A DNA stretch of 64,000 nucleotides from Asterias rubens (GCF_902459465.1 NC_047074.1:12958001-13022000), one strand, 5' to 3'. Shown: positions 164 through 64,000, counted from the stretch's first letter. A program made the numbers and translations. Notes: a model not told the origin generated them from the sequence alone.

Positions 164-342
164 GTAGTCGGGATGAAACCCAAGAGGCCCTCGGCCTTCC
201 ACAGCCCAAAATCGGCTCTGGATCACCCTTCAAGAATTTCACTCTTCGGAACCTGAAGATAAGCTCCATCTTAGCATTTGCCCGCAAGCTCCATCTGGAG
301 GATACAGCAGACGAACTGCTTAAAGTTGTCAAGACGATAGTC
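164..342 (+). CDS. Giant gene exon 1/96 (first visible)
   Basis: cag|GT..GTC|gtaagt; SRDETQEALGLPQPK..LLKVVKTIV. Confidence 0.8.
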
Positions 343-3300
343 GTAAGTTTAACTGGAAACAAAATGAAAATATAAAAGTTACTCCTATTGTTATGACCCT
401 TCCATGTTTTTTTTAATCAAACAAACCACAAAAATCCTCTATAAACATGTTTGATATAAAAAGACCCTAAAGGTCTAATGATTCAACACACATTATCAAG
501 GCTGTAATAGTTGTTTAATCAATTTGCAAGTCGGATAAATATTTATTTGGTTTTCCATTAATTAGAAACTTGTGAGCGACAAGCCGTGTGTTCTTCCCGA
601 GTCTATGACCAACGATGCTTTAAGGATTGAGCTTCAACAGAGAGGTCTGAGCTCACAAGGAGAGAGGAAGATGCTCCTCAAGCGATACAAAGAACCCGAA
701 GACCGTAAATGTTTATGACTTTCAAATTGAACAGAAGTGATAACAGGACACTTATATCCTTTGAGCGGAAGAGAACATGGACCTTGGGGCTGGGATATAT
801 CCGTCTGTTATCACCCTAACTAACATTTGATCTTCATTTTTGTTTTTTTATTTTTTTGTTTTACAAGACTTATACATATTTGTTTTTAAATGCACCAGAC
901 CCTATACACAATACACCAAATAAACAAGAACTTTTAGTTTTTCTTTAAAACATTTTGTTTATAATTGAGATGAATTCAAAACAGTGTGAACCGTGAAAAA
1001 AAGGAGTAATTTTTGTACCGCCGAGTTATGGCTTGATACTATCTTAAGTGGTTAGCGTGCACAATAGAACAATCCTTAATTATGTGTTTAAGTGAAACAA
1101 CACTCTTTTTTCACCCCGCCACAGGTTGTCCTCTACTTCAGGTCTCCCTACCTAAGAATGTATACTGTAAGATTGATGAGAGCTGCCTGGGTGTAGAATG
1201 TTGTATGAACATTAAACTCTTCATGGTGTCTCTGGCTTTCAAGGCATTCATGAGATTTGATCCCAGTGAGTTTCAGTTCATCATTGGTGTCAACTCGTGG
1301 AACTACACTGTTCAAATCCTGACGGCAGAGTGGGGTAAGTGGGAGTAATGGACCTGTTATATGCACGTGACGTCATTTTAAAAGTGCGTCCTCGTCAGGA
1401 TTCGGCTGAAGCCCTGAGCACTAACGCGAAACACACACGCAATTGTCAAAGTGTTGTGTTGAAAGAAATCATTTAACAATATTACAGTTTTTGCATTTAT
1501 TTTACTTTTTGACCCAAAGTGTTGATGTTTTTTTTTTTACCGAAAAGGTATTTATGAATGGGAATCAAAGTGTGTTGAATCGGTTTTCAACCAGTGGTTT
1601 TAACCCGCCGAGGCCTGGTTCCTGATAATTTACCTCGACTTCGTCTCGGTAAAATTATCAAGAACCAGGCCTCGTTGGGATTAAACCACTAGTTGAAAAT
1701 CTCTTCACAACACATTGATTCCCTTATTAATATTAAGCTTGTGAACTTTGACAAAGCTTCGACTTGATAACGTAGCTTTGAAATTGCTAACAGCTCTTTC
1801 TAAAAGTGTGACTGCATTTTCTGCAGGTACCAAGTCTCACCATAGAACAGTGTTAATTTTGTATTTGGTGATTATTCAGGGAAACAATGGGAGGTTCCAG
1901 TCCCCTTTGATGTACCTTTTGTTGATGACATGAAACTTCATCTTAGGTAAGTATTTCTCGTAAAGTTAAATATGGTAAATGATTCAGCATAATAATAAAA
2001 GCTGTGTTAAACTTAAAGGAGCACGTTGCCTTGGATCGGTCGAGTTGGTCTTTGAAAAGCGTTTGTAACCGTTTGTTATAAAATGCATATGATTAGAAAG
2101 ATATTTTAAAAAGGACAATATAATGATCCACACAAGTATCACTCGAAATTGCGTGGTTTTCCTTTTACCTCGTCGACTAATACGGTCGGCCATTTATGGG
2201 AGTCAAATTTTGAATGGCCGACCTTGTTAGTTCGCAAAGTTAAAGGAAAACCACGCAATTCCGAGGCAAATTTGTGTGGAACTTTCTACTTTTAAATCAC
2301 CTTTCTAACCATATGCATTTTACAAACGGTTACAAACGCTTTTCAAAGACCAACTCGACCGATTCAATGCAACGTGTTCCTTTAAGCTATTTTTGATTGT
2401 ACTGACTGTAAGTGACGTGGCCTTGCCTCTAAAATCTCGTATGTTTTGCACCAGAAACGAGTTTTGCACACTATACATGAATAGCAATTTTTCATTGTAA
2501 TCAATTGAAGGTTCAGCGTTGAAAAGACAAGAACTCAACTTCTTGTCAGCATGAGCGTGGGTTTCTGCCCTGAGAGTGGGGACGCAGAGTGCCTGGAATT
2601 CCTCGATGTGCTTCAAGATTCCGCTGTACCACTTCCCATCTACAACCCTGATGGCACATTCACTTGGCCAGAAAGTAGGTCACATTAAATCATGATTCTA
2701 ATACACTCTCGAACGTTTGTCTCAGTGGTGTAAAGCATTTATGAAACTGTTGCTGTTTGAACGAAACAATAGGCCTAGTTGTGAGATACATTTCGTAAAA
2801 TAGTATGAATTGAACCCATAGGAGAGATGCAAGCTTTCTTAAACTCATCTCACATCTCTTCAAGACGATATCCCCTTTCTCAAGGGTTGACTTTCAGTAA
2901 GTCGAGAAAATTTACTCTCAAATGAAACATAGTTGCAGGATATTTTCGAAAATAGTATTGTATCTCGTCCGGAAGATACCACTTTTCCCAATTTCCCTAA
3001 GTAGTTTTCTATTACGCTTTATCTTCTCCAACTCGCCATCGATTTCCGTATTCAGTAATACTGGGACGCGTTGACTTGGGTCGGGTGAGCTGGTCTATGA
3101 AAAGCGTTTGGAAACATTTGTAAAATGCAAATGGATATAAAGTTGTTTTAAAAGTAGAATATAACGATCCACACAAATATGCCTCGAAAATGCACAGCTT
3201 CTTTATGCGTTGTGATCTAACACGGCACGCAAATGTGTAGTATAGAGTCCACACTTTTACACTTCACAAAATGGCCAACCGTGTAGTACGCGAAGTGTCT

Positions 3301-6300
3301 ATTTAACGTGTCCCTTTAACTATTGATAAAACAGAACTGCTGAAGCTGTTTGTTTCTGTAATCCTCTTTTAGTTGACGTCGAGGAGTATTTCAGCCGTGG
3401 CAAGTTGAAGAAGTTTGTCAAAAAAACTGGAGAGGAGTTTCTTCGGGCAGGAACAGATGCAGCGATTGATTATGTTCTGAGAGAGATTGGCTTGGACAGA
3501 GTATGTTTTGTACTGCTTTCATATGTCTTCATAAATTCCTTGTGTTATGGGTTCAGATGTTTTTACCACCCTCAACCCTGCCAATGAAATTTTCTGCTTA
3601 TTTGGGGCAAGAGAATAGTAGAACCTTCATGCATAATCATCATCATCCTTCGTCCTTGGACGGAATAGTAGAATCAGATTTGATGAAGTGGTGTCAGGTT
3701 GCTTTGTCCCTCATTAGTTGTTGGGTCTCGTTTGGACTGAGATTTGTGTATTTGGTGATGGTTCTGTGTAGCTCATTTTCCTCCTGCCGCAGTTTGGATG
3801 TCCGCCAACATTACAGGAACACTTGTGCTTGGTTTTGCCAAATTTGAATAATAGGAAACCTGTGCATCTTTCTTTTCCCCGTTTGTTAAAACAGAAACTT
3901 CTGGATGGAAAAGAACCTCGTCCAACACCAGCCAGTTTGAGCGACCCTCAGCTCATCGGTGCACTTGAAGGCAGGAATCTGAAAACAACAGGAAGTAGAG
4001 CTGAGAAAGAAAATAGGCTCTCTCGGGATGAACGTAGTAAGTTTGAAAAAGATGCAACCTTTCACAAGAGGGTTAATCACTTTTGTTGGTAACAGGTCTT
4101 CATGGGAGAAATTAAAGTTAGGTCAGATGTTTTTTTTTTTTTTTTTTTTTTTTGGGGGGTATACATTTTAACATATTTTTCTCCACGCAGGTTGTGAAAC
4201 ATTTACTCTACCAGCATTCTCCGGAAAGGTCGCCGAGATTGCCTACTGCTCAATCAGTGAGAACTGCCTCCGTATTGACTGCTGTCTAGAACTGAACATC
4301 AAAGTTTTAAAGTTCAAGTTCAGCCGCTCCTTCGAAGCATTCATTGACGTCAATGCGTGTGATTTCTCGATTACAATTGCCTTTCAGCATTTGCGGTACA
4401 CCAAGTTGCTGTTGAGTTACGATTGGGGTGAGTGTTTATAAAAAGTACTGAGTAAAGTAGCTTTAGAGAAAATGTTTAGATTTGGATCAAGTGCAGCCAT
4501 TTTTTCTTTATCAAGAAGATCATCACTGAAGGATGGAACACATTGTTGTGTAACTTGCTCGGTGGCCGGACACAGTCATTGTTATATTAGCTAAAATGAC
4601 AGCAGAGGCAAACAAAAAGAGGTACCAATAGGCCGAGCCATCAGAAGAACTAAATTTTCAAAGTGTAACATTGGTATAATTTGGGTAAGCAATGTTGTTA
4701 TAAAGGATTTGAGGCATTGCATGGTGAGGTATCAATATTTGGTTTGCGGTAACACCATGCGTGTATCTACTTGCCAGGTAGAGTTTGTTCTTAGTCTTTC
4801 TTTAGTCAACTACCGCGGAGTAGATTTATCGGACGTTCGGGAGACTTCTCAGTTCTTGCTCTAGCTTGCTGTAGTCATCGTCAGGTGACTAAAGCTAGCT
4901 AGTCGAAACGTTGAGACCAATTCAGAAACTGACTCAGTGACAGTGCATGTAATTACAATCCTTTAAAGATGCTATGTCAGATTTTTGGCCGATTTGACCC
5001 CAAAATGTTGATTTTAAATTCAAAAGGTATTTTGTTGGGGGTCGAGAAAGTTACAAGCTTTCATTTGAGCGATTGCTCGAAAAAGTCCGCCAATCATTAG
5101 TGAAATAAAGTGCTCAAAATTAGTTTTTGTCGAGATCCCGACAATATATCACATGACCAATTCTTATGTGTTTTATAAGAAACGTTGTAAATTTGTTTCA
5201 TGGTTCCTGACCATTAAAAGTTAAAGGTTAAACTTGTTTCGTAAGAGCGGGTGATACTCTTTGAAATACCATTCACTCAAAAAAAAAACCCTGTTTTTTT
5301 ATAGTTTGGGGCCAAAACTCTGACATAGCATCTTTAACCTAAAGTAGTAGAGAGAATTGATATAAGTACATACAGGGGCATTGCTTGGTAACATACAGCA
5401 CAGGATAGATTGAGATGGAGAAGTGATAAAGAGGCTTTCCTCCTGCAGTGGAGTGAAACAGAATAGACGATGAGTAGTCCCAGCCAATTTTGTATTCCTT
5501 CCGCCCGGGTACTAGTCACAAAGCAGGACAGTTCGTTTGAGAAGCCTCCCGAACATCTGATAAATCTACTCCGCGTTTTCTTTTTTAATATAATAAAGAA
5601 AAACAGTTCGCTAGGAACACACTCTACCTGGCAAGTAGATACACATTTAGGGTGCTACCGCAAAACCAAAAATTAATATACAATGATATTGTGTTTTCTT
5701 TCAGGCGATGTGAAGCAACAGCAGATCGGACCATTTACACTGAGATACACAATCGATAAACTGGATGATGCAAAGCAGCTCAAGATTGACTTCGGAGCAT
5801 CGGTTTGCCCCATCAACGGGGAGGAGTGCATCTTTGACATTGACATCATTCAGGACTACAGAGTGCCGATTCCATTCTGCAACTCCGACTTTTCACTTTC
5901 TCTGCCAGGTATGCATATAACTTTAATTATGGCATTATTGGTAAGGGTTCCCTACTTAATAAAAGTTTAACATTGTACCATGAGTTAAGAACCGAGTTTT
6001 AGGCGAAACAATGAAACCGTAAAATCCTAATAAATAAGTACCTGCAAACAAAATTTGCTATAAATCTAAATTCAAACACAAAAAAACCTTATATAGAATT
6101 ACCAGACTAGTCAAAAGTGAGTTGAAATTAACAACTTTCATATTTGTTTCTTTTTTAATTGATATTGAGCCCAAAAAAATTTCTATCAGGTGCTTACAAT
6201 TGTTTTGATTTTGTGTTTGTTTTGATACGCAGGGAAGAATAGCCTGACTGATTTTATTACTCAAGTTGGTCGAAATGCCGGTCAGCAAGCCATCAACATT

Positions 6301-9300
6301 CTCCTACAGTTTATTGGTCTGAGAGATAAGATTGACGATGGACCCTGTGCCTCCACAACTCAGGATGGTATGAACAAACAATCAAGTTTTCCATTTAAGG
6401 GTGGTTTTAAACACAATGTGCCAATTTTCTACGTAAGTTCACGTATTAGTTATGTATTTGTTTCTTTGGTTTTCTCCTTTTTCAACATTTTGTTCACAGT
6501 TTCCTTTCTATAGTTGAAAAGAAAGTTTAATGGTTCCTGAGCTTATATCTGTGTTCATTGTAAACCTTGCATTTGCATTTACGAATATTTTCAGTATTGC
6601 AACTTGCAATACAACTTATAAATGAATCAAAAAAGTACTTCTTAAATATTATTAGAATTATTTTTTTATAAAATAAAAACATAACGAAAAAATATATAAC
6701 ATAAACAAATAAATACTTTGTTTTGAACCAGTCTCATTCAATACTCGTTATTTTTTCAGTGTGCACTGACGTAACTCTCCCTCGTCTTCCAAGCACATTG
6801 ACCTGTGACCTTTACGATCGCTGCCTCGGTGTGCGATGCTGTGTTGATCTGGATCTTCAAATCACTGTGTTATCAAGTAATGTATGGCTGGAACTTGATC
6901 CATGCGAGTTTTCACTATCCATGGGATTTGGAAAGTGGTCCATAACCTTCAAGATATTCGACTACCACTGGGGTGAGTATTTTGTAGCTAGTCATTATTA
7001 TCAACAGATCAGTACAGGGGTTCTCTTCAGGGGGTTTATGCAAAGTTGAGTTGGGTGCATACAGATGCAAGTTTTGGCAAGGTTTAATTAAAGAGAAACC
7101 ACTCAGAGAAATAATATCAAGTGAACAATACATGACTGACAATTAGAGAGAAAATAACATTGTTGGTAATTTGACCTTGGTATTGCAACTATTTGTATTA
7201 AGACGTGGTTTCTCTATGATACAAATTGACTCAAATAATGCCATTTCGAAACTAAGATGAATGGATAAACAAAGTATATCATTCGTTTATTATTGTTATC
7301 AGGCACCCAAGAGGAGCTAAAGATCGGCAAGGCCTTGACCCTGATTTACACCATCAACAAATTGACCGAAGACAAGGTGTTTGTGTTGGACCTGGCTCTG
7401 TCTCTTTGTCTTCCCGATTCGAGTTGTGATATAGCGCCCTCTATTGACATCTTGAAAGGAACGCGTGTACCTATTCCGTTATGCAATGAGAACGCAACAT
7501 TCGCCCTTCCAGGTATGCAAATAAAGAGATGAATAGGTTTTTTAAGCTTAACTGTGAAATTGTTCCGCCCCAACTTGAGCTGCAGTCTCTACATAATTGG
7601 GATATCCCTCAGACTTCAGACCAATCAAAATAAACCCAGCTACGGTAGCTTTTAGTCACTGCATTTATCCAATGATTTCATTGTATCCAATGGATTCACT
7701 GGATCTGAGGTTCAGGCACCTGCCTTTATCCTTGCGGTTAAAGACAGGGGCCCAGTATACATAAGGGTATGATTCAGCTAGTGAGGATCAACCTAAGATA
7801 TGGTAAACTGGTTCTTCAAACTTGGAATCTCTGTTAAGAAAATCTTAACACTTTGTGTTAATATTGATAATACATGTATTGTAGTTTATGCAAAAATAGA
7901 AGACAAAAAACACTTCAGTAAAAGATTAAACAACAGGCTCGTTAAAATGGAAATGTTGTCCATTTTTGTTTTACCATCACTAGGTCGTTTCGCACTATGA
8001 TCACGAGGGTCTACATACTAGATGTGACTCAGAATGTTTCATCATCCTTAGCAAAGACAATTTTTATATCTTCATAGGATATGAAGACACCGGACACTAC
8101 TGGTTTTTGTCAAAGACTAGTCTCCATAGTTGCTGTATCTCAACATAGGCATAAAATAACAAACCTGTGAAAATTTGAGTTCAGTTGATCGTCGAAGTTG
8201 CAAGATATTAATGAAAGAAAAAACACCCTTGTCGCACCATGGTCACACGAAGTTGTGTGCATTCAGATACTTTATGATTTCAAGACCTCAAATTCTAAAT
8301 CTAAGGTCTCGAAATCAAATTCGTGAAAAATTACTTCTTTCTCGAAAACTACGTAACTTCAGAGCGAGCTGTTTCTCACAATGTTTTATACTATCAACCT
8401 CTCCCCATTACTCGTAATCAAGAAAGATTTTATGGTAATAATTAATTTGAGTAATTACCAATAGTGTCCTCTGACTTTAAAGACACTGGAAACTGTTAGT
8501 AACCCTTCAAAATAGTTGTTCGCTCTATAAAAGTTTGTTCTGGGTTTAATGATGCATATATCAAATGTAAACAGGTGATGGGACTGTGTCAGACTTCGTG
8601 AAGATGATGGGACAGAATGTAGCCGAGTCGGGTATCGATGCTGTGCTCACCGCTCTTGGCCTGTCAGTAAGTAAACCAGACTAAATGGTACAAGGAGACA
8701 ATTTCCGTAGAAAAAATTTAATACCTTGTTATTTCAATTCATTTTCAATTCAATTCAATTCAATTCATTAAGGTTTATTAAAAAAAATCACAAAATACAC
8801 GACAGAAGTTAAAAAGACTTAAATTGGCGTGTTTACATTCATTACTGTCAACAATGACAATAAACAAAAAAAAAACTGACTTAAAAGAAGAGAAGAAACG
8901 CTCCAGGCATGAATGCACAAAAAAGATAAAAATTGGACTAAACTTGGTAAACATTCGATAAAACTGATAATTCATTATTATTAAAAATTACACAAGACAA
9001 CAAACTCTGACTTAACAAGGAGAAGAAACTGAAGGCATGAATGCACAAATTTAAAAAATTTGATCAAATTTGATAAACATTTGATAAAACTTAACCCAAC
9101 TGTTAGAGATACTTGTTGATCAAGCCACAAATTGTGTAACTTTCAATTCAATTAGAATAATTTTAGTGTCAAGTAAAAAGACAACAAGAACAATTATTTA
9201 CATATCTAAACATTGATGGAAGCTCCAAAACAGCTAAGAAAAAAACCCAGTTAAAATGGTAGAAATAGATTTACACCAACAATTTCACAGCGAGAAAAAC

Positions 9301-12300
9301 AAATATGTAATGAGTATTTTAAAATAACCGTCACAAATAAATAAAGGCCTTCAAACTTTATAACAATCTAAACAAACTGAAGTTCAACCAAACCAAACCA
9401 GCAAAGACAGTTTAACCATTTAACTGACATATTACTCCGCCCATATCGCTGCATTGACCCCATTTCCATTGATTAGAACAAACAATTTAAATCTTATTGG
9501 AATGCAGAGTAAGCTCATACATCTCGTTTTCACGTACTATTTATTTGTAGAAGTTCATTGGTCAGGAGCCATGTGTTCGCCCGCAGGTCACACAGAATGG
9601 ATGGCATAAAGGTAGGTTTGTGGAAAGTGAAAAGAGTCACCTTTAACGTTGATTTAAGATTCAAGTAAAATGGAAGCAAATTTTCTTAATTTTACACATG
9701 GTTTTGTTCACAAGTTGTAGATTTGGGATATCATCTACTAAACCTCATTACATTTCTGCAGTTTGTCCTAGAGATGTCAGACTTCCACATTTACCAAGAC
9801 ACCTCATCTGCACTCTTCCAGAGAAGTGCATGGGGTTCGATTGCTGTTTCGAGCTTCCAATTCCTGGACTGACCCCAATCAGCACCAATGTCTCCTTCAT
9901 ATTTGATCCTTGTAACTATAAGTTGTCACTCTGTCTGGGAAGCTGGAGTAAAGACCTACACATCCTCTCCTATCAGTGGGGTCAACAAGAAGAGGTCACC
10001 ATTGGCAAGGCAGTGTCTTTCAGGTAATCAGTGTAGAAATAACGAAAGATATTTAAATGTTTCAGATATTAGTTTTTATTTGCTTACAATCAAACGTTAA
10101 TTTGGTCCAATTTCCTCACAGTCTAACCATTGACAAGGTCGAGGAATCCTTCCAGATCAACTTGGATATGACCTTCTGCCTGGACGGTGACTGCACTCCA
10201 ATCCCGATCCTCAGTGATGCCATCATCCCCATACCATTCTGTAATCCCAATGCCACCTTTGAGCTTCCTGGTGATGGAAGCTTTGCTGCACTAGCAAAGG
10301 ACCTCGGAGGCAACGTCGGCGAGTTGGCGATCCAGGCTGGTCTACGTAAACTTGGAATTCAGGTTGGTGAATTAAATCAATGGACAGTGCTAACACAGTA
10401 CTTTCCCAAGCTCTGTCAAAAACGAATCACAGGCATATTACTTTGGTGGGATTGAAACCTAAGTCAATTTGTGTTTTGGTTGGACGTGGTGTCCGCATTT
10501 TGTTTTGGGGACGACGGTAGTCCTCAATACTATTGGTAATTGTCAAAGACTAGCCTTCACAGTTAGTGTATCTCAACATATACATAACATAACAAACCTG
10601 TGAAAATTTGAGCTCAATCGGTCATCGAGATTGCGAGATAATAATGAAATAAAAAAACACCCTGTCACAAAAAGTTGTGTGCGTTTAGATGGTTGATTTC
10701 GAGACCTCAAGTTCTAAATCTTTGGTCTCAAAATCAAGTTCGTGGAAAATTACTTCTTTCTCGAAAACTATGGCACTTCAGAGGGAGCCGTTTTTCACAA
10801 TGTATTGTACTATCAACCTCTCCCCATTACTCGTCACCAAGAAAGGTTTTATGCTAATAATTATTTTGAGTAACTACCAATAGTGGCCACTGCCTTTAAG
10901 CTGTGGCATAAATCAAGCTTAGTTTGTTATGTTTAGGCTATAATGTGTCCGAGTATAACGCATTTTATCGAAAAAGCGATGAAATTCTTTATACTCGGCA
11001 TATTACTCCCTGTTGGTGTTAGCTCGCATGAGTCACGGGGAGACTTGTTATCCAGTCTAGGTTTTTCCCTATTAACACGATGCCATGTCGTGTGTGTGGT
11101 ATTATGTATGGTAGTGTTGGGTATTCAGCAACCAATGGGAGCGTTGCTTATATAAGTTTGTGTTGGTTTGGTTTACATGGTTGACTTATTAGGATTGGTG
11201 TTGCAATTGAGTGGCTGAACGTTTGGCGGGAGCATAATTATTGTCACTTTGTCACAGCTCAATTTTGGAGTAACCGAGATTGCCTGGTAGCTAGGGGTAA
11301 TTCGAATTCTATATTTAGCAGCGGGTACCGCAACTTAACTAAACTCAAAACTTATCTTAAGCAGCTTACCAAATTGTTTTGAAATTGTCATCAAGTTCGT
11401 CAATTTGTGGAACTGTTTAATCTTCAGGAATTTGCCATTAATCAGCAGTGTGACCTGACGATACTTGCTCGCGCCGAAAACAGTAAGTTATTTTTCTTCT
11501 TGAGATTACAGGTTTCTAAGCGATCATTATAAACAATAACAGTACATGGGCTCTTTTCTTAAGTTTACTCCTTTTATATATTTCCCTCACAACTTAAATA
11601 TTAGGTATTATTTTAATAGGTGTTAAATTTGCATCGGGGATAGGCCCCAAAGAATGTTAATGTTGGTTTTACTCACCGATGTGTGCTAGCACTGCCGTCG
11701 ATTTCACAAAACTCTTCCTAACTTAAGACTATTTACAGGACTTAGGACGAGTCCCAACCCTGCACGGTAGCATGCAGACCTTAAGATTAATCCTAACTCG
11801 AGATAAGACGAGTCCTAACTCTTTGTGAACTCGACCCCTGTATACTTAGTACTTTCCCGAGTTCTTTGAACAAAAACACAGGCATAAACTCGGGTGTGAT
11901 TCGAACCGACGAGCTTTCATGGAGGTATTATTATATAAATAAAGCAATCTTACGTTTTTTCAACTACATCTGATATGTCTAATTCACTTTACTACAAGTT
12001 TATGTAGACACAAAATTTGTTTTCTTCTTAAATTAACAAGCCGTTCCGTCTTTCAACCCAATAGAATGCCCACTGATGAATAAACCACCTTCAACGAACA
12101 TACTGACCTGCACAGTAGACGACCAGTGTCTTGGTATCCATTGCTGCGCCTCCTTGGATCTTATCTTCACTCGACTATCTACCACAGCTTGGGCCGTTCT
12201 AGACCCTTGCGAATTCGAGCTGTCTGTTGGTTTTGGATCTTGGACTAAAAGCTTGACTCTCTTCGAATATGACTGGGGTGTGGAAAAAACAGTTGACATT

Positions 12301-51300: not shown

Positions 51301-54300
51301 TGAAGTTACTTTTACACTGTTTTCAAGAATTGTCGGTGCAAACATTTTCTAATTCAATTCGAATTCAATATTGGTTTATTTTCATATAAAAATACAAGAC
51401 CAAATAAAAAGTCATAGACTAATGGCATTTGGTTAACAATAAAATTACATCAAAAATATATGTACAAATTTGCATAAGACAATAATTATTATTAAAAATA
51501 TTAATATAGTTAAATAGACAAACAGGAATTGGGAAAACAGCTATGGACATGCGGGGGAACTTGAGGACACAATATAAAAACAAAAAAGGGAGTTTAAAAC
51601 AAAACAGCAACATTCTGTAGGCAAGGGAGGTTTGGACACAACGTGAATACAAAGGGAATGAGACGGAGCGGTTATCATGAACTAATTGAGTTAAGCATCT
51701 GGAGCATTGAGGGGACTGGCGAGTTTTTGTATCTCTGAGTTTTTATCTGAAGGTGTTCTAGTTGCCTGGTGTTTCTTAAAGTATGCTCTGACAAATAATT
51801 AAATTTACGTTCTGGGGGGGAGGAGATGGCGATGATTATCAGAAGTGAGCAGAGATTTGGCAAATTTAAGAACTAGGTGTTTACGCATTTCATTCAATGA
51901 TTCAAGTCTAAAAAAATTCAAGTGATCAAGATAAGACAAAATATTCGGATAAGCAATAATACGCAAAGCCCTTTTTTGAACTTTTTCAATAAGCTTGTAT
52001 TTCATATAAGCTTGTGATTCCCGATGACCAAACAGCAACACCAGATTCGAGTAATGGGCGAATGTATAGTTCAATAAATAACAATGAGGTCATTGGCTTG
52101 AACTTGATTTTTCTTTAATTTACTGAGTATGTTAAGTCGTCGTGAAGCCATACTGACAATCTGTTGAACTTGTTGGTCCCATTTGACATTATTTTAAATA
52201 GTAATCCCAAGAAGCTTCAGTGACGAGACAGCTTCAAGTTGCAGACCATTGACATGCAGCTGAATGGATGAAACCGGATTTCTTAGAAAAGAAATCTGCA
52301 TTACCATACATTTGGAAGGATTCAGTTTCATATCATTAACATCACACCAATGCACAAGTTCATTAACACCAGATTGTAAGTTTGACTGTTCACCTCTGGG
52401 AACAACCTCAACCACACTGAGATCATCCACATACTTCCATCGATGTTGGATATCATTGGCAGCATCATTGACCATGGCCAAAAAAGAGGATTGGTCCCAA
52501 CTTTGTGCCCTGTGGGACACCGCATGTCAGTAAAATACTGAGCGTTAAATAATTATATTCATCTGAATGAACGCTGCATTATGTTTGAAGTTGTTATCTT
52601 GTCGTAATACCAGTTAGTATTCGATCACACAAATTTATCATTGATAAATTAATTTAATACCAACCTACATTGTATACATTAGACAAGTACTTCTGTATTT
52701 GACCACAAAATGTTTTCCATGATTCCATGTATCCTTTTAATCGGGACAAATCTTACATTAGCCCGACCCAGAGGGTCCACCCTGCCCTCAATTATAACTC
52801 ATTTTAACGTCAACCTGACGTAGTGACCCCCCCTCCTCCCTAACCCATCAGCACAATATTAGATTACTTTAAATGTTCACGATTCCATTATCCTTTATCC
52901 TAGGAACAATCTTACACCAGCCAAACCCAGAAGGTCCACCCTGCCCTCTGACAGATACTTCGTTCACTGATCCAAAGTGGCAGGCCTTGGATTTCAACGG
53001 ACTATGGAACATGAGGATTGACAACTGGGATATAGAGTACCACAATCAACAGGTACGATACATGAAACTCCGGTGAACACCTGGGGGCCAATTCCATAGA
53101 GCTGCTTAAGCAAACAATTTGCTTAAGCACGAACATAGCTCGCTTATTTTACACATGTTACTTGCCAAATTGTTATGCCATATACATTGCTTGTGACTGG
53201 TATTTAGCTGTTGTTTACTTAGCATAACAACTGAGTGGACTCTTGGCCGGTAATCCGATTTTACTAAGCAAGGATTTTTTCGCTTAAGCAAACTTTTTCG
53301 CTTAAGCAGCTCTATGAAATTTGGCCCTGAAATTAACCAGCATGATAAGCACTCTGTCATAATATTTGTTGCCCTAATATTTGTGTCAGTTCGGTGTGTC
53401 ATACTTTTTAAAATCCATGCACTGTTCTGTACACTCCAATATTTAATCATCTCTATATTTTAATACGCATAATTTATTGTCTGTATTTTTTATAAACATG
53501 TATGCCATTTGTTGGCGGGGCTGGGAGGGCACATCGTTTTGATTACAGTTTTGTTTAAACTGTTGCCTTACCCTTGGCGGCCCTACAAACAAAGATCATC
53601 CGAAGATTGGAAATAAAATAACGAAAGAAAATATACTTTTGTCTAATTTGATTGGGTTTTAACTGAACATTCTCTTGTCGAAACTTGTTCACTTGTAAAG
53701 CAGTTCAGGCCAGAATAATGGTATTTTAACAAATGCTTTTCAAGTATTTCTTTGAGTTGCTTAGTATAGATAATCATGTCAGTGTCTACCTCATTTGTGT
53801 TGTTAAACATACTCTGTTTCAATATTATTATTAGCACTAGGTGAATAAGATTGGATTAGAAGAGTAATTATAGAAACATTAATTGTGAAACTTGAGCCGT
53901 CATTTTATAAAGAGTTTTAAAGATTCAGTTGCATAAGTACAAACTACCAATGATACGAGTCTTCAAGTTAAACGCAACATTGTATCAATTTATTGCTTTT
54001 CTTAGATATCTGCATCGGATGAAAGTGTGTTTCTGAAGATGGAGCGAGATACACGGGAACCTCGTATGCTCTCCGGAGCGTATGTCATAAATGCACAAAT
54101 TGTCCGGAGCTCTGAATACGAGGTAAACGTTCATCATCAGGGGAAGTGGGAAGAATCAAGTTTTATAATTTTATTAGGCGTTGTGATCTTCGAGAAGTTT
54201 TTAGTTCGGTGTCTCGGGCAAACTTCCATATTTTTTGCACAGATAGTCATACAGTCAAGAAACCCCTTCAAGTTTACATTTGTATAATAAAGGGATACGA

Positions 54301-57300
54301 TTTAAAAGTATGTAAAGTCTGAATAAATCGAGAGAAAAATATAAGCATTTCAAGTGCATATGAAAAGAACCTGGGAACTGATTATTATTATTATTTTATT
54401 TGCCATAACAGTACAACACAAAATACAAGACAAAATACCCCGAGATGGACAAGGGACAACAAAAGCAAGATCTGTTGCCCCACATCTGGGGTACACAATA
54501 AAATTAATAGAGATTTAACATAATATAGAACACAAAGCAATAATAAAAGCAGATTACTATACAACCAATAGTAAATAATAAAATATCTAATAAGAATTTT
54601 AAAAAAAATTATATCCACAACACATGATTTAATCCGTGAAACCTAATTTAATACATTTGGATCCTGACTTCATCTACAGAACATGGTGTTCTAAATTTAG
54701 AAAAAGGAAGATCAATGGAGTTTGCGGTGAAGAAATTGTGACTAGATTTTTTTTCCGTGAAACCAATTCTGAAAATACACCAAGCACACTTCTCTAAAAA
54801 AGGAGGAACTTTGAAGATGGGTGGATTTTAACAAAAAAATAAACACAACCTTAGATAAAGAAACGGTTTTAAATCTGCCAGTTTTGGACATTTTTCTTGT
54901 TCAGTTTGATCTGATGGCTGCATCATCAGACCTTCATAGCGTCACAAGTATTTTGTTCTGGGATGGTCCAGACAGAGTGGTCGGAGAGTACGACTTTGGT
55001 GGAGCTGAGAATTGGCAAGAAGGGATATGCCAGTGTTGTTATGCAATACCCTTCAATCAGGTAATGCGTTTTTTTCTAGGTATAACCAGCAATCAAATTG
55101 TAATAGACCTCTTGCATGTGACGTTTGTGTTCCCTTTTCAGGTTGCTTAATTTTATTGGTAGTGTTAAAGGAACACGTTGCCTTGGATCGGTCGAGTTGG
55201 TCTTTGAAAAGCGTTTGTAACCGTTTGTTATAAAATGCGTATGATTAGAAAGATGTTTTCAAAGTAGAATATAATGATCCACACAAGTATCACTCGACAT
55301 TGCGTGGTTTTCTTTTTACCTCGTCGACAAACAAGGTCGGCCATGTGGGAGTCAAATTGTTGACTCCTTTAATGGCCGACCGTGGTAGTTCTCAAAGTAA
55401 AAGAAAAAACACGCAATTTCGAGGTAAATGTGTGTGGATCATTGTATTATACTTTTAAAACATCTTTCTAACCATATGCATTTTAAAACAAATGGTTACA
55501 ACGGTTTTCTAAGACCAACTCGACCGATCCAAGGCAACGTGTTCCTCTAAAGTGTTTGAGTCGACAAATAGTTGGATCAGCCCCTACCTGCTTGTGTACT
55601 CATTTTCTTTCAAATCATTACAAGTGAATAGTTTTTGCATTGCCATCTCTAACTTGAGAATGAAGCATGAGTTTTAATGGTGTAAATCTTTTTTTTTTTT
55701 TTTTTACATCAGTCTGATTGCCCTGATTGTAACTGCAAAGATTTCCTGGGAATAGACGATTCAACCTCTGCTTACTCGTCAGTTAACAGCACAACAATTG
55801 ATTTGGTGACTACAGAAACGGCAGACATAACCACTGCTGATGAAGCGGCAGACATGACCACTGCTGATGAAGCGGCAGACATGACCACTGCTGATGAAGC
55901 GGCAGACATGACCACTGCTGATGAAGCGGCAGACATGACCACTGCTGATGAAGCGGCAGACATGACCACTGCTGATGAAGCGGCAGACATGACCACTGCT
56001 GATGAAGCGACAGACATGACCACTGCTGATGAAGCGGCAGACATGACCACTGCTGATGAAGCGGCAGACATGACCACTGTGAACTCAACTCAAGTTCACA
56101 CGAAAGAAGTTAAAAATGTGACACGAAAACTGTGGACCATTCGTAAGAAAGATGCAGTTGGTGACGGCATTTCTGATGAAGTTGGCGGCAGATGGACTAA
56201 ACAGAGAGCATGTGGTCTGCAACTGCATCCAAGTAAGTCACTTTTTCTTCAATTCTATCAATGTGACAGGCATGCCAGTGGGCCAATAATATGTAGACTT
56301 ACTCCTAAGTTGAAAGGCTGGCTACACATTGAGCCAGTGGTCTCCAATTGCATCCAAATTTAGTAAAAATTTATTCAGAACTCTTGTTTTTTCTTATATC
56401 CTATCATTGCGAAAGGCATGCCATTGTGATAAACATGTAGACTTACTCCTACGTTTAGTATCGTGACTGTGAAATTAAATGTTGGTGTGTTCAGCGTGTA
56501 GACTCAACTTCAATGTTTAAATTTTTGATGGCAAACATCGTCCACTTTGTGTATTGACCTATCGTAAAATAAGTGCATAAATGTTTCAAGGTTTTTACAA
56601 CAGCTATCAATATCAGAGCGCCGGTTGTTGCAGATTTGTTGTTTCCATTTGTTTTAACACGTTTTAAATTTCCATTTTTACTCATTCTATTTTTTTTCTT
56701 CTATAGATGGCAACGCATCACAGTTAGTGTTGTGGTGTCGCCATTTTGAAGATGAATGGCCGATGACGTCACAGTCTGTAGATCTTGACTTTGACCCATC
56801 CATGGAGGAACACCACTACTCTATTCACTTCAGTGTCATGCCACTTGATGCAAAAGAGGTACATTTATTTGTAACAAAGGGTTGTAAAATCGCTCCGCTC
56901 TCTGTCGCAATTAATAACAACTTTTTGCCATTTTGAGTTACTGTTTGGAAACATCGGTTTCGAGTAAACATTTACCATTCAACTTTCTATCAGGAAACTG
57001 ATGAGAAACTTAACACTATCAATTCGCATTTGTATTAGTTGAAAACTATATAATTTTCGTATTTTAACGGATTTCTTCATAGATGTTCAATGGATGACAT
57101 GGTATACAAACTCGACATTATTGTTTTTGAAAAGTTATAATAATTGTTGACATGACGGGCAACCATTTTTGATATGTCTAGTTTAGCAGTAAGCTTTTAT
57201 TCCAAAACATTGTTGATAGGACAAGTGTTCATTAAATATCTGCATCATTTTTAACTTTGCTTTAATGGATGACACGCTGTATATATCTCAAAATCTGGAC

Positions 57301-60300
57301 AAGTTTTTAACATTTCTGACGTGAAGAGCGGTCACTTTCTGTACAAGATGCAAGTGACTTTCGTTTGTTTTTTTCTTTCTTATTTTTGTTTATGTTCTGA
57401 CAGGACGAGTGGTCATTTAATGTGTACATCGATGGCAATCTTCTCTCTTCTTTGACCGGTATCCCTGTCATGTCTTCATCCACCAAACTCATCCTTCATG
57501 TCTTCAACAAAGATAACTATGTGGCTGATCTAGATGACGCCTTCAACCCACCTACTGCTACAACAACCATCAAAAATCTAATGTAATATAGTTGTGTCTT
57601 TGTTTAATATATTCATATATTCGGCTAACACATTATGAATGGACTATTCTTCTCTATGCACAGTCTGACAAAGCTGTATCACTTATCCATAATTATTGTG
57701 TAGCATAATAAACTTGATAAAGACTGAAATAGAATAATGAATACAACAACTCATTTGCTTATACAGGATGCCTCCAGATGCTAGTAGGCTCTGCCGTTAT
57801 GGGTTACCATTCAGAGCGGGTACCAGTCCAGTTTCCAGATATTTCGCTGGTGTTGGTAGTGAAGCGGGAAAAACAAACATTGTGGCGTATGAGGAGGTAT
57901 GTTTGGCCTACTTAAAATGAGGGATCTCTAGTAATATTGTTAATTATTTGTTACCAATATTGCTGCTGCTGTTGCTGCTGCTGTTGCTGTGGCTGCTGTT
58001 GTTTGTTGTTTGATGTTTGTTGTTTGATGATGTATGTTGGTTGTTGGTTGTTNNNNNNNNNNNNNNNNNNNNNNNNNNNNNNNNNNNNNNNNNNNNNNNN
58101 NNNNNNNNNNNNNNNNNNNNNNNNNNNNNNNNNNNNNNNNNNNNNNNNNNNNNNNNNNNNNNNNNNNNNNNNNNNNNNNNNNNNNNNNNNNNNGTTTTAA
58201 ATTATTCCAGATTTCCCGGCCGTGTGTACCGTGTATCAATCCATGTGATTGGTACCAGTGTAATCAGTCATGCTCCATGGAGGAAAGCTCCATTACATTC
58301 ACACTCACCAACCTGGCTCTGCCGAAGCTGGAAGTCCTAAACACCACAAGGAACGACACAAATAATACTTCATCTGCTACTGGGGAGGATGGCTTACCCT
58401 CTCCTTTCTTCCTGACAGGTATAGGTGGTTCGGTAATAATTATAAATAGATTAGTGAGAGACTTAGGGTATGGAGAAATAATTATGAACATGTGGTGGTG
58501 TTGAACCATAAAAATGTTCTACAGATCTGTGAAACTTCCCCAACGTCATGATGCACTTTACATTACTATGGGTGTTATTTCTTATGTATCTCCTCTGTTT
58601 TGTATCTCCTCTGTTAAGGAATTTTGTACAATATTATGGTCTTGATAATAGGTCAATCATGTTCAACCCTCAGATACCTTCTGAAAAAAAGTCAATCTGC
58701 CTCAGTTGTTTTTTTAATCGATTTTTGATTTTCGTCTTATGTTTAATATAGGCTTTAAAACTATTCCCCGACAACCATAGCATGTACGTCTCGCTTCTTC
58801 GGACATTGTAAAAATTAATAACACAGGCGCGTGAACTAAACTATTCTGAAATAACGAAACTACCAAACACCCTCATGAAAACCACATGTAAGTAATAATT
58901 GATTTAAGTTTAACTCTGGATGTGTCACTCCTCAGTTAAGTGTGTCCTAGGGAACGGACAAGAGGCGTCTTCATCTTCGAACGGTTTCTACATTGACGAT
59001 ACACCAGCAAAGCTTGATGTCTTATTCTACGTGGATATCAATCGCAACGCGTATGAACCAACAGAGTTCCAGTCTTCAAATTCAACAATCAAGGTCTTGT
59101 GGAGTTTCATTGACATGCAAAGTCAAGTTAAGGTACTCAATTTATCTTTCTCTGTATTGATAATATTGCTTATTTTTCACTTTTACTCGAGGGTTGGGAT
59201 TTCGGCAGGTTTTCGGACTCGGTGTGGCTGATAGCCAAGCAGTAAAGCCCGGTTCATACTTCATGCGAATGCGTATGCGGAGCGAATTTGACGTGAATTT
59301 GACATCACAACCCTCCTTTCGCAGCGATATTTGCAAGTGTGTTGAGCAAAGTTGAACTGCTGCGAATTTTTCTTTGCGAATTTGTGACGTCAACATTCGT
59401 ATCGCATTCGCACTCGCAGGAAGAATGAACCGGGCTTTAGACTATATATTTTTATTTATTATTATTTTTGCATTGTGACGTTTCTGTTTTGGTTTCCGTG
59501 TTCCTTTTAATGCCTTGGATTGTTGTGCTTGTATTTTGGGGGTTAAAATAATAAAAAATAACTAGAAAAAAAAGTGTATTTCAACCGATTGACTTTGCAG
59601 AGAAATTGTTATTGATTTTATAATCTGATTCTGACGATGTGTTATGATCGTTCCCATCATTCAGGAACATTATTGGGCCATTGGAACGTCAAGAGGTGCT
59701 GTGGACTTACAAGACTTTGTCAATGTTGGATTGAACCAGACAGCTTACAATAGCAACTTGGAAGGACAACTACAACACAATACATCATACTACGTGACTG
59801 TCAAGTGCATCAATGGAGCTGGATTGGAGACTGTGGTAGAATCTGATGGTAGGTAACGAGCAAAGACATAGGCAATGGCAAATTCCTTCATTCCGAAAAT
59901 ATTTTCTGACCAGGGATCTTTGGAATGCATTCGTTTATTCACTCATGTATGGCTCTTAAATTTTACTAATTTCATCACTCCAGGTGTGACGGTTCTCTTT
60001 GAGAAACCCTTCCTGGATGATCTACACCCCTGTCAGTTTAATGTAAATCTGTGGATATTGTGTTTTGTGTCCTACGAAAAGTACCCAGACCCTTTAACTT
60101 GAACCCTTGTTTCACTCCAGGTGTAACGGTCCTCTTTGAGAAACCCTCGGTGGATGATGTCAACACCACCTCCATGTTTAGTCAGAAGTTTGAAGAGGAA
60201 GTTTATCCACCTGACGTGCAGAAGAATGACGACCCAACAAAGACAGGAACCTCCTGGTCCAAACCTGAAGATGAGTCCATCGATCGATATGGTACAACTG

Positions 60301-63184: not shown

Positions 63185-63212
63185 GTATTCCAGTCCCTCT
63201 AAACAATCATGT

Positions 63213-63592
63213 TTTAGGGAATGTACACGTTTGGTAATTGTCAAAGACCAGTCTTCTCACTTGGTGTATCCCAACATAAGCATAAAATAACAAGCCTGTG
63301 AAAATATGAGCTAAGTTGGTCATCGAAGTTGTGAGAAAATGACGAGAGAAAAACCACCCTTGCTGGACGAATTTGTGTGCTTTCAGATAGGAATAAAAGA
63401 CTTTTGGCTACTACAGAAGTATTTTATTATTTTAGTGAGAAATTACCCTTTTCTTAAAATCTATGCCACTTCAGAGGGAGCCGTGTCTCACCAAGTTTTA
63501 TACTGTCAACAGCTCTCCAATGCTCGCTACCAAGTCAGTTTTAAAGTTGATATTTGTTTTGAGTAATTACCAAACGTGTACCTTCCCTTTAA
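63213..63592 (+). mobile_element. MITE family A, diverged TIR subfamily
   Basis: agggaatgtacacgtttggtaatt..aattaccaaacgtgtaccttccct-ttaa; family A interior. Confidence 0.85.
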
Positions 63593-64000
63593 AACAGAGT
63601 AACTCGGAAAAGTGTTATATAATTTAACTGGCCCTAACAACCCTTTAAAATGATTTTTGGGGATTACAATCAAGTTAATGCAGAACAACAAAAGTCCGGA
63701 TGGTACCCTCATTTTATGTCCATATTGGTTGACTGTATGACTCAAAGATGAGAGAAAAATAAGCTATAGGATACAACATCGTACAACCATCTTAATTGTT
63801 GTGTACAATCCTTTTACTGTTGTGTTGATTTTAGCTTTAATATTATCATATACGTATTTGTATTTTTAGTCTTGTTATGTATGTCAGATGCTGAGGATCT
63901 CGACATATAGGGTGAGGTGCTGCTCTCACCTCCACTTTTTGTCCTGTTAATTACTTAACTAATTTTCGTTTGAGTTTATTTTGTTTCCTCCTTGATGGTT

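What the first reader, a model, noticed from the sequence alone, without database searches (positions are those of the whole stretch)
164..63184. A single >5,700-aa uncharacterised modular protein gene fills the window
Seen: 96 exons join into one stop-free frame of about 5,725 codons, and neither end is reached, so the real protein is longer. The order SAP-like / 12 Cys repeats / furin sites / beta-rich region / ~18 FN3-Ig-like repeats with inserted PAN and LamG-like modules / furin sites matches no characterised gene I recognise. Inference: Cys pairing, sequons and convertase sites suggest a secreted or surface polyprotein, possibly a matrix scaffold or a pattern-recognition or capture protein. 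Most exons are missed by the ORF track, so automated annotation may fragment the gene.
Basis: partly seen in the sequence, partly recalled or inferred. Interest (0 to 1): 0.88.

Follow-up and report, generated by a model that had tools for sequence, protein, structure and literature searches.

The report
Giant membrane-anchored lipid-transfer-family gene in starfish
The window holds the middle three quarters of one real, transcribed starfish gene for a 7,554-residue cell-surface protein that databases already list but nobody has studied, and it belongs to an undescribed, membrane-anchored branch of the yolk/lipoprotein (vitellogenin, apoB, MTP) superfamily.

Summary
Observation confirmed. A gene model built here from a brittle-star ortholog and RNA contigs has 96 GT-AG exons (164-63136, + strand) and about 5,700 codons without a stop. 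It matches residues 1271-6944 of Asterias rubens RefSeq 'uncharacterized protein LOC117298318' (7,554 aa) with no mismatch. The two differences are a 3-residue donor choice and three extra units of a coding minisatellite.

The N gap (58053-58193) lies inside an intron that RNA contigs of three runs splice out (57896>58211), so the frame is continuous.

New here:
- The full protein has a signal peptide, a Vitellogenin_N head and a C-terminal transmembrane helix.
- The 'beta-rich region' resembles the lipid-binding beta-sheet of MTP and vitellogenin.
- The 190-residue Cys module has no Pfam family and no solved structural relative.
- Orthologs of 7,300-7,600 aa with 11-14 Cys modules (12 in most) occur in echinoderms, amphioxus, molluscs and a nemertean. 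None has been characterised.

Function is inferred only. RefSeq does not fragment the gene; a GenBank Patiria annotation does.

The parts
164..63136 (+). Part of one gene (Asterias rubens LOC117298318) lying in the window: 96 exons encoding residues 1271-6944 of 7,554. Positions 1-163 and 63137-64000 are intronic.
   Evidence: Model. Zero mismatches to P0241. Collinear with P0171 residues 1143-6771. All introns GT-AG.
566..704 (+). Exon encoding SAP domain 1 (core at 599-694).
   Evidence: Pfam PF02037, E 9.3e-7, 28.8 bits against a cut-off of 23.9. PF02037 is also precomputed in orthologs from sea stars, abalone, mussels, a nemertean and amphioxus.
3895..4036 (+). Exon with a second, weaker SAP-like motif (core at 3934-4005), between Cys modules 1 and 2.
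   Evidence: PF02037, E 6.6e-4, 19.7 bits, below the cut-off.
1125..24066 (+). Array of 12 Cys modules of about 190 aa, each spread over 2-4 exons. Module starts: 1125, 4191, 6760, 9762, 12065, 13242, 14501, 15805, 17775, 19298, 21896, 23140.
   Evidence: Self-similarity clusters. Alignment A1 has 5 invariant Cys. The profile finds 751 proteins. AF2 model with pLDDT 84.9. No Pfam match in 125 units. No significant PDB match. dN/dS 0.14 against Patiria over 681 codons.
24067..24081 (+). Furin-type site RRRRR|S directly after Cys module 12.
   Evidence: The exon is covered by RNA contigs. A basic site at the same position is present in all 8 orthologs checked.
24082..26782 (+). Spacer of about 88 aa between the paired basic sites (end of exon 23919-24095, exon 25063-25229, most of exon 26700-26819).
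   Evidence: RNA contigs X2 record 9 and X3 record 16. The same 88-aa spacing is seen in brittle-star P0171 (sites at 3474 and 3562).
26783..26794 (+). Second furin-type site RKRR|D.
   Evidence: In molluscs the second site lies about 380 aa further on.
27140..32179 (+). Conserved core of three helices followed by a meander of very long beta-strands, read as the lipid-binding sheet of the large lipid transfer protein family (exons 27140-27229, 27679-27818, 29570-29732, 30717-30787, 31014-31168, 31969-32179).
   Evidence: AF2 on alignment A3 gives pLDDT 95-98 for the sheet. Foldseek's top hits are MTP (E 4e-4 in PDB; 7e-5 in Swiss-Prot models), then vitellogenins and apoB. Sub-threshold Pfam hits to MTP_lip_bd and Vit_open_b-sht. 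MTP is also the top PDB hit by profile, E 0.34. The region also matches, by profile search among the fetched proteins, those of cnidarians, Capsaspora and a chytrid.
34676..34884 (+). PAN/apple domain exon, between two partial FN3-like units (33295-34071 and 34834-35249).
   Evidence: PF00024, E 7e-8, 32.6 bits against 21.4. Also found in P0171. FN3-like profile hits.
35939..51151 (+). Run of 14 FN3/Ig-like repeats of about 110-117 aa, some carrying a W..F.D.ESGI..Y motif.
   Evidence: Iterated profile search gives E 1e-11 to 5e-32 per unit. Pfam fn3 is only weak on single exons but reaches E 2.9e-12 on P0001. Atlas features point to fn3 and bacterial Ig-like families.
51152..57791 (+). Non-FN3 insert of about 450 aa, possibly a concanavalin-A-like (LamG/GH16 clan) jelly roll.
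   Evidence: Atlas features: score 0.91, 173 shared features with GH16 clusters. PF13385 is precomputed in amphioxus orthologs. No Pfam hit here. This is a lead only.
55815..56079 (+). Coding minisatellite of 27 nt x 9.8 copies (EAADMTTAD units) inside exon 55713-56232.
   Evidence: TRF finds 98% matches. The window has 3 units (27 aa) more than P0241. The stretch is short in brittle star (40 aa against 165 aa).
57792..61923 (+). Three further FN3-like units.
   Evidence: Every exon here is joined by RNA contig joints.
57897..58210 (+). Intron containing the assembly gap (N at 58053-58193), preceded by a (TGC/TGT)n microsatellite at about 57962-58052.
   Evidence: The joint 57896>58211 (GT..AG) is seen in runs X2, X3 and X6, and the contig positions run on without a break. 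Sequence read.
61984..62001 (+). Third furin-type site RRRQRR|A.
   Evidence: A basic site at the equivalent position occurs in 7 of the 8 orthologs checked; the eighth, partial P0001, ends before this region. The exon 61916-62044 is supported by RNA.

Best explanation
The window carries exons for residues 1271-6944 of a single, expressed, selectively constrained gene: Asterias rubens LOC117298318, 7,554 aa.

Shown:
- It is one transcription unit of 96 exons in the window.
- The product belongs to a family of 7,300-7,600-aa proteins conserved in echinoderms, amphioxus, molluscs and a nemertean.
- Reading the full RefSeq protein, its parts in order are: signal peptide; Vitellogenin_N; basic site; weak M23-like domain; SAP; 12 copies of a Cys-rich module predicted to be a beta-sandwich with three helices, with no Pfam family and no solved relative; basic sites; helices plus an MTP/vitellogenin-like lipid-binding sheet; FN3-like stalk with PAN and a possible ConA-like insert; basic sites; cadherin-like domain; EGF; one transmembrane helix; a tail of about 190 aa.

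Inferred:
- Its lipid-binding module is split by about 3,000 aa of inserted domains.
- Furin-type convertases cut it in the secretory pathway into about six pieces. These may stay associated, as the pieces of apolipophorin II/I and vitellogenin do.
- It holds a lipid- or ligand-binding head far from the membrane on a stalk that is probably more than 100 nm long.

What it binds (lipid, microbial surface or matrix) is unknown. I give lipid or lipophilic-ligand capture at the cell surface about 0.35.
For: - Single gene: 75 collinear HSPs to P0171 across 169-62803; a 10-kb RNA contig bridges the Cys-array/beta-region boundary; RNA joints cover every exon from 57404 to 63096; 0 mismatches to P0241; no minus-strand homology.
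- Constraint: no stop in 5,698 codons; dN/dS 0.14 against Patiria.
- LLTP head: Vitellogenin_N at E 1.6e-13 in P0241.
- Lipid-binding sheet: Foldseek to MTP at probability 1.0, and 25 of the top 30 Swiss-Prot hits are LLTPs aligned to the same region; weak Pfam hits and a weak profile hit to MTP agree.
- Topology: signal-peptide-like N-terminus and a single hydrophobic helix at 7340-7364, as in the abalone, limpet, brittle-star and nemertean orthologs.
- Convertase sites are conserved in position across phyla.
- Phase-1 introns predominate, 51 of 95, as is typical of extracellular module genes.
Against: - The Vitellogenin_N head, signal peptide and transmembrane helix lie outside the window and are taken from the RefSeq model.
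- The match of the beta region to MTP has low TM-scores (0.2). Sequence-level support is below threshold. VIA-align ranks generic outer-membrane beta-barrels above apoB. So homology to the LLTP sheet is probable, not proven.
- Nothing shows that the two LLTP parts fold together.
- Cleavage, membrane insertion and lipid binding are all untested.
- The tissues of the RNA runs are coded, so the site of expression is unknown.
- SAP, M23-like, PAN and lectin-like parts would fit a microbe-binding role equally well.
Confidence: 0.8

Rival explanations
1. Secreted matrix scaffold or polyprotein. Convertase cleavage frees large soluble fragments, such as the 3,000-aa Cys-module array and the FN3 stalk, which build or organise an apical extracellular matrix. 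The membrane anchor serves only for delivery.
For: At least five conserved basic sites. Repetitive Cys and FN3 modules typical of matrix proteins. A Thr/Ala/Asp-rich, mucin-like minisatellite. Strict conservation of 12 modules between mollusc, brittle star and sea star suggests a structural ruler rather than a fast-evolving receptor.
Against: The transmembrane helix and a 150-250-aa tail are conserved in orthologs. A lipid-transfer head has no obvious matrix role. No matrix-assembly domains (VWD, collagen, laminin N-terminal) were found.
Confidence: 0.3
2. Pattern-recognition or capture receptor. The vitellogenin-like head, M23-like (peptidoglycan-hydrolase fold), PAN and lectin-like modules bind microbial surfaces. 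SAP may bind polyanions.
For: The domain set. From general knowledge, vitellogenins bind LPS and peptidoglycan. The family is expanded into many paralogs in amphioxus and bivalves, and A. rubens has a recent tandem paralog at 89.9% identity.
Against: The M23 and lectin assignments are below threshold. dN/dS of 0.14 and one-to-one orthology with a fixed module number argue against an arms-race receptor. There is no recognised signalling domain in the tail.
Confidence: 0.25
3. Two or more neighbouring genes wrongly read, and wrongly modelled by RefSeq, as one.
For: The two halves have very different composition (Cys-rich against Cys-poor), and the boundary region is poorly conserved.
Against: A 10-kb RNA contig crosses the boundary in frame. 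Orthologs from five phyla keep the same order in one protein. Intron phases match across every junction.
Confidence: 0.03
4. Decaying pseudogene or untranslated locus.
For: None beyond its extreme length and the assembly gap.
Against: No stop in about 5,700 codons spread over 96 exons. Spliced RNA in several runs. dN/dS 0.14.
Confidence: 0.01

Closest known systems
Large lipid transfer proteins: vitellogenin, apolipophorin II/I, apoB, MTP
   Same: N-terminal Vitellogenin_N module. A long-stranded beta-sheet whose best structural matches are the C-terminal lipid-binding sheets of MTP and the open sheet of vitellogenins. Furin-type cleavage close to the LLTP module, as in apolipophorin II/I and insect vitellogenins (the latter from general knowledge).
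   Different: Four to eight times longer than these proteins (apoB excepted). Membrane-anchored by a C-terminal helix. About 3,000 aa (M23-like, SAP, 12 Cys modules) separate the Vitellogenin_N part from the sheet. No von Willebrand D domain was found. It carries a stalk of about 19 FN3-like units. No member of this branch has been studied, as far as six literature searches show.
Giant FN3-rich type I membrane proteins such as usherin, sidekick and PTPRQ (comparison from general knowledge, not tested here)
   Same: Long FN3 arrays, an interspersed LamG-like module, a single transmembrane helix and a short tail.
   Different: No laminin N-terminal, laminin-EGF or Ig head and no phosphatase domain. 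The FN3-like units are closer to bacterial Ig-like families in Atlas features. The head is LLTP plus Cys modules.
Sea star footprint protein Sfp1 (from memory only)
   Same: A very large, multi-domain secreted protein of Asterias rubens that is processed into several subunits.
   Different: As I recall, Sfp1 is built of EGF, lectin, discoidin and VWD-type domains. None of these was found here except two EGF-like motifs near the membrane. No sequence relation was tested.
Orthologs: Asterias rubens LOC117298529, Acanthaster LOC110985344, Patiria LOC119724026 and LOC119732930, Amphiura P0171, Haliotis LOC124137708, Branchiostoma LOC118406510, Lineus LOC135499666
   Same: Same domain order, 11-14 Cys modules and conserved basic sites. 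Identity to the window's peptide is 47-90% for the echinoderm members; tblastn chains to the window give about 37-40% for the abalone, amphioxus and nemertean proteins.
   Different: All are database predictions named 'uncharacterized'. The 90-aa spacer between paired sites is shared only with the brittle star among those checked.

Membership tests
[quoted passage not shown] | N-terminal lipoprotein module (Pfam Vitellogenin_N: beta-barrel plus helical domain) | tested here: met
   P0241 residues about 40-584: E 1.6e-13, 50.6 bits against a cut-off of 24. Also in P0171. This module lies upstream of the window.
[quoted passage not shown] | Amphipathic open beta-sheets that form the lipid cavity | tested here: inconclusive
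   The AF2 sheet is confident. Foldseek gives MTP, vitellogenin and apoB as top hits at probability up to 1.0, but TM is about 0.2. Pfam MTP_lip_bd and Vit_open_b-sht hits are below threshold. The profile against PDB gives MTP at E 0.34.
[quoted passage not shown] | Binds or transfers lipid | not testable with these tools
   Needs biochemistry.
SAP domain (PF02037) | Match to the 35-residue helix-extended-helix profile above the curated cut-off | tested here: met
   Window 566-703: 28.8 bits against 23.9. The second copy, at 19.7 bits, does not pass.
SAP domain (PF02037) | Nuclear, DNA-binding context | tested here: not met
   The domain lies between a signal peptide and a C-terminal transmembrane helix, flanked by Cys-rich modules, so it is predicted to be extracellular. 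Binding itself was not tested.
PAN/apple domain (PF00024) | Profile match above the cut-off | tested here: met
   Window 34645-34926: E 7e-8, 32.6 bits against 21.4.
Fibronectin type III repeats | Pfam fn3 match above the cut-off in the repeat units | tested here: inconclusive
   Single window exons reach only E 0.06. Summed weak hits in orthologs reach E 2.9e-12. An in-house profile finds 19 units. No structure was predicted for a unit.
Laminin G / concanavalin-A-like lectin clan | Profile or fold match | tested here: inconclusive
   No Pfam hit in three orthologs. Atlas features resemble GH16, which is in the same clan. PF13385 is precomputed for amphioxus orthologs at an unknown position.
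Proprotein-convertase substrates | R-X-K/R-R motifs at conserved, exposed positions in a secretory protein | tested here: met
   Sites follow Cys module 12 and precede the membrane-proximal region in all orthologs that reach these regions, i.e. 8 and 7 of the 8 checked. Cleavage itself cannot be tested with these tools.
Peptidase M23 (LytM) | Profile match above the cut-off and zinc ligands | tested here: not met
   20.7-24.4 bits against a cut-off of 28.7. This part is outside the window. Ligand residues were not examined.

The most novel reading that the evidence does not exclude
This gene represents an undescribed branch of the lipid-transfer superfamily. Its conserved core was found here from cnidarians to amphioxus, with more distant matches in Capsaspora and a chytrid, and it was not seen among the hits from vertebrates, insects or nematodes. 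In this branch the lipid-binding module is anchored to the cell surface on a stalk probably more than 100 nm long, and is split by a convertase-excisable array of a new Cys-rich beta-sandwich domain carrying an extracellular SAP motif. It would act as a surface lipid- or particle-capture machine rather than a circulating lipoprotein.
Probability: 0.35. Interest if true: 0.7.

Novelty: new variant of a known kind. Interest (0 to 1): 0.5.

Why it matters
Lipid-transfer proteins (vitellogenin, apoB, MTP, apolipophorin) are textbook soluble or lumenal lipoprotein builders. A conserved, membrane-anchored, 7,500-residue relative would widen what this superfamily is thought to do and how it arose. 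Relatives of its core were found in many marine invertebrate phyla and, more distantly, in a unicellular relative of animals.

It also supplies two unexplained parts for structural biology. One is a 190-residue Cys module with no Pfam family and no solved relative, kept at 12 copies in mollusc, brittle-star and sea-star orthologs. The other is a SAP motif in a predicted extracellular setting.

As a genome-scan result it is more modest. The gene is real and correctly modelled in RefSeq, and giant modular surface proteins are common in echinoderm genomes. Nothing here shows its function.

Tried and rejected
1. My own ab initio exon-chaining finder (hexamer coding score plus generic splice matrices). 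It found most acceptors but overshot many donors, recovering only 1 of 5 exons known from RNA, so I replaced it with ortholog-guided junction choice.
2. Pfam on single exons. Only PAN and SAP passed. Most of the protein is invisible to Pfam, even in full-length orthologs.
3. Fold search for the Cys module. Foldseek on PDB gave nothing at E <= 0.001. VIA-align's best was FAIM-NTD at Z 7.0, which is background level. AlphaFold clusters gave only family members plus weak DUF4773 hits. I do not claim a relation to fatty-acid-binding proteins, VWD or DUF4773.
4. LamG by Pfam on three orthologs: no hit.
5. An apparent 44-aa gap against P0171 at 51241-52885 turned out to be a reverse-transcriptase fragment wrongly included in the brittle-star model. 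Other orthologs run straight across it.
6. tRNA and Rfam scans of the window: nothing.
7. Six literature searches by locus names and by domain combinations: nothing relevant.

Full report
**What the window is.** It is AT-rich eukaryotic DNA (GC about 0.38) with one run of 141 N at 58053-58193. Earlier notes on this genome call it a sea star. Open frames on the + strand fall into repeated families: 12 copies of a Cys-rich piece, and a family of 13 that holds the 'FTIDKL...IPIPxCN' pieces and some of the helical pieces that follow them. Large families present on both strands are interspersed repeats in introns.

**Homologs and the single-gene question.** A profile of the 12 Cys pieces (A1) found 751 proteins in the 1.84-billion-protein library, 22 of them at E <= 1e-30. 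The long hits are amphioxus and bivalve proteins, all hypothetical or uncharacterized. Searching onward from the amphioxus hit and then from the brittle-star hit gave full-length relatives of 7,300-7,600 aa:
- Branchiostoma floridae LOC118406510
- Haliotis rufescens LOC124137708
- a Patella caerulea protein
- Lineus longissimus LOC135499666
- Amphiura filiformis P0171
- the sea-star proteins of Acanthaster, Patiria and Asterias

Brittle-star P0171 aligns to the window in 75 collinear tblastn pieces. Its residues 1143-6756 match window 169-62803 at 47.8% identity. All 4,303 HSPs from 100-odd large homologs lie on the + strand and none on the - strand.

**RNA evidence and the gap.** Only two read-laying runs were allowed.
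- On 23000-28999, one 10,021-nt contig of run X2 covers exons 23140-23352, 23919-24095, 26700-26819 and 27679-27818. The unaligned stretches between them have exactly the length of a 40-nt exon (23734-23773), the 167-nt exon 25063-25229 (seen in X3) and a 90-nt exon (27140-27229). So one transcript crosses from the Cys array into the next region, in frame.
- On 57300-63299, a 2,710-nt contig and shorter ones from three runs give GT..AG joints for every intron from 57582 to 63096. These include 57896>58211, which skips the whole N gap while the contig's own positions run on without a break.
- The gap therefore sits in an intron, after a (TGC/TGT)n microsatellite and 17 nt before the acceptor. 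It hides no exon and does not disturb the frame.

**Gene model.** My ab initio finder was unreliable. Instead I took ungapped anchors to P0171. For each neighbouring pair I chose the GT/AG pair that best preserved a global alignment to the ortholog. I added small exons found by local searches. This reproduced every junction known from RNA.

The assembled model has 96 exons, 17,096 nt and 5,698 codons with no stop, and starts at 164. Exon coordinates:

164-342, 566-704, 1125-1334, 1880-1946, 2511-2674, 3373-3500, 3895-4036, 4191-4427, 5705-5908, 6233-6367, 6760-6972, 7303-7512, 8575-8666, 9551-9611, 9762-10023, 10122-10362, 11428-11482, 12065-12320, 12634-12880, 13028-13070, 13242-13494, 13879-14125, 14250-14307, 14501-14756, 14886-15135, 15496-15550, 15805-16060, 16308-16462, 17003-17134, 17775-17981, 18148-18190, 18464-18615, 18958-19095, 19298-19556, 19752-19912, 20492-20620, 21896-22100, 22295-22515, 22740-22859, 23140-23352, 23734-23773, 23919-24095, 25063-25229, 26700-26819, 27140-27229, 27679-27818, 29570-29732, 30717-30787, 31014-31168, 31969-32179, 33214-33444, 33949-34249, 34676-34884, 35055-35350, 35902-35996, 36170-36340, 36960-37140, 37627-37793, 38205-38332, 38712-38949, 39577-39757, 40383-40629, 41252-41372, 41768-41946, 42555-42714, 43406-43630, 43951-44039, 44517-44634, 45333-45523, 45721-45916, 46162-46268, 46528-46705, 46940-47644, 47951-48220, 48404-48670, 48867-49157, 49409-49512, 50325-50540, 51035-51209, 52904-53052, 54006-54122, 54905-55060, 55713-56232, 56707-56858, 57404-57582, 57767-57896, 58211-58418, 58936-59132, 59665-59848, 60121-60291, 60704-60926, 61586-61665, 61916-62044, 62145-62295, 62665-62807, 63096-63136.

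All 95 introns are GT-AG, and 51 are phase 1.

This peptide matches P0241, Asterias rubens 'uncharacterized protein LOC117298318 isoform X2', residues 1271-6944, with no mismatch. There are two differences. RefSeq has three more residues at the exon that starts at 13028 (inferred to be a donor at 13079 rather than 13070). The window has three more 9-residue units in a coding minisatellite.

The window is therefore A. rubens or something indistinguishable from it, and the gene is already modelled as one 7,554-aa protein. Against the Patiria locus L001, 681 aligned codons give dN 0.26, dS 1.8 and dN/dS 0.14.

**Architecture inside the window.**
- SAP. Exon 566-704 is a SAP domain above Pfam's cut-off. 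Exon 3895-4036 is a weaker copy.
- Cys modules. There are twelve, of about 190 aa each. AlphaFold2 on 125 units from eleven proteins gives a confident model (pLDDT 84.9, pTM 0.75): nine strands of a beta-sandwich followed by three short helices. None of the 125 units hits any Pfam family consistently. Foldseek finds no solved structure at E <= 0.001, and the best VIA-align score (Z 7.0, FAIM N-terminal domain) is at background. Module number is 12 in the abalone, limpet, brittle-star and sea-star orthologs, 11 in the nemertean and 14 in amphioxus.
- Basic sites after the array. The array ends in RRRRR|S (24067-24081). A spacer of about 88 aa follows, then RKRR|D (26783-26794).
- Conserved beta core. 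Next comes the most widely conserved part of the whole family. Among the proteins fetched here, it also matches proteins of cnidarians, Capsaspora and a chytrid. AlphaFold2 predicts three helices and then a meander of 20-25-residue strands at pLDDT 95-98. Foldseek's best solved match is MTP (E 4e-4), with apoB-100 and lipovitellin further down. Among Swiss-Prot models, 25 of the top 30 are MTPs or vitellogenins, aligned at their lipid-binding sheets. Weak Pfam hits to MTP_lip_bd and Vit_open_b-sht and a weak profile hit to MTP in PDB point the same way. TM-scores are low, and VIA-align ranks generic beta-barrels first. I read the region as probably, not certainly, the LLTP lipid-binding sheet.
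- FN3-like stalk. Then come 19 FN3-like units. A PAN domain sits between the first two. A 450-aa insert resembles the concanavalin-A-like clan only by Atlas features, and it holds a 27-nt x 9.8 coding minisatellite.
- A third basic site, RRRQRR|A, lies at 61984-62001.

**Outside the window (from P0241).** Upstream are a signal-peptide-like N-terminus, Vitellogenin_N at E 1.6e-13, a basic site at 628 and a sub-threshold M23-like domain. Downstream are a fourth basic site at 6974, a cadherin-like/Big_9 domain, two EGF-like motifs, one hydrophobic helix at 7340-7364 and a tail of about 190 aa. Orthologs show the same ends. Basic sites occur at the same relative positions in every ortholog that reaches them.

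**Interpretation.**
- Shown: one expressed, constrained gene; its domain order; conservation of that order across phyla; the absence of any characterised relative.
- Inferred: a type I surface glycoprotein of the LLTP superfamily, cut by convertases into about six pieces. Its Vitellogenin_N part and its MTP-like sheet are separated by about 3,000 aa of inserted modules.
- Not decidable from sequence: whether the two LLTP parts reunite to form a lipid pocket, and whether the protein captures lipid, binds microbes or builds matrix. I rank lipid or ligand capture slightly ahead (0.35) of matrix scaffold (0.30) and pattern recognition (0.25).

The GenBank annotation of Patiria does break the ortholog into genes of 400-470 aa. 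The scan's two other notes on this window (SAP motifs; paired furin sites) agree with what I found. I found no note of this family on other DNA.

Noticed in passing
window 55815-56079: A near-perfect 27-nt coding minisatellite (9.8 copies, 98% matches) encodes EAADMTTAD units. The window has three units more than RefSeq isoform X2, and the brittle-star ortholog has only a short linker here. It could be a length polymorphism, or a modelled internal intron in RefSeq.
   Followed up: partly
window 8078-8461, 10463-10880, 16578-16937, 24558-24980, 25248-25628, 27916-28251, 63210-63624 and others: An interspersed repeat family sits in introns in both orientations. Contig depths in all runs are enormous (up to millions). 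No tRNA or Rfam match was found in the window.
   Followed up: partly
window 57962-58052: A (TGC/TGT)n microsatellite directly abuts the assembly gap. This probably explains why the assembler stopped there.
   Followed up: yes
window 56208-56232 and 56333-56359: The last 25 nt of exon 55713-56232 (ACGLQLHP) recur in degraded form about 125 nt downstream in the intron, in another frame and without a donor site. This looks like a small local duplication.
   Followed up: partly
window 13070 / 13079: My ortholog-guided model ends the exon that starts at 13028 at 13070. RefSeq's three extra residues imply an in-phase donor 9 nt further on, inferred at 13079. This may be a case of alternative 5' splice sites.
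   Followed up: partly
P0171 residues 5876-5920 (Amphiura filiformis RefSeq model): This stretch reads like a non-LTR reverse-transcriptase fragment and has no counterpart in the window or in other orthologs. It is probably a transposon exon wrongly included in that 'LOW QUALITY' model.
   Followed up: yes
L001 (Patiria miniata GCA_015706575.1, JADOBP010000008.1:9319212-9347742): The GenBank annotation splits the Patiria ortholog into separate small genes (472 aa and 400 aa). RefSeq models it as LOC119724026, 7,475 aa.
   Followed up: partly
outside the window (same 15.2-Mb contig by database record): A. rubens has a second copy, LOC117298529 (7,606 aa), 89.9% identical to this gene's product. 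Acanthaster and Patiria also have two or three copies.
   Followed up: no
window, all introns: 51 of 95 introns are phase 1, and Cys modules 4-7 share a regular three-exon layout. Several other modules are split further, which suggests intron gain or loss inside an old tandem array.
   Followed up: no
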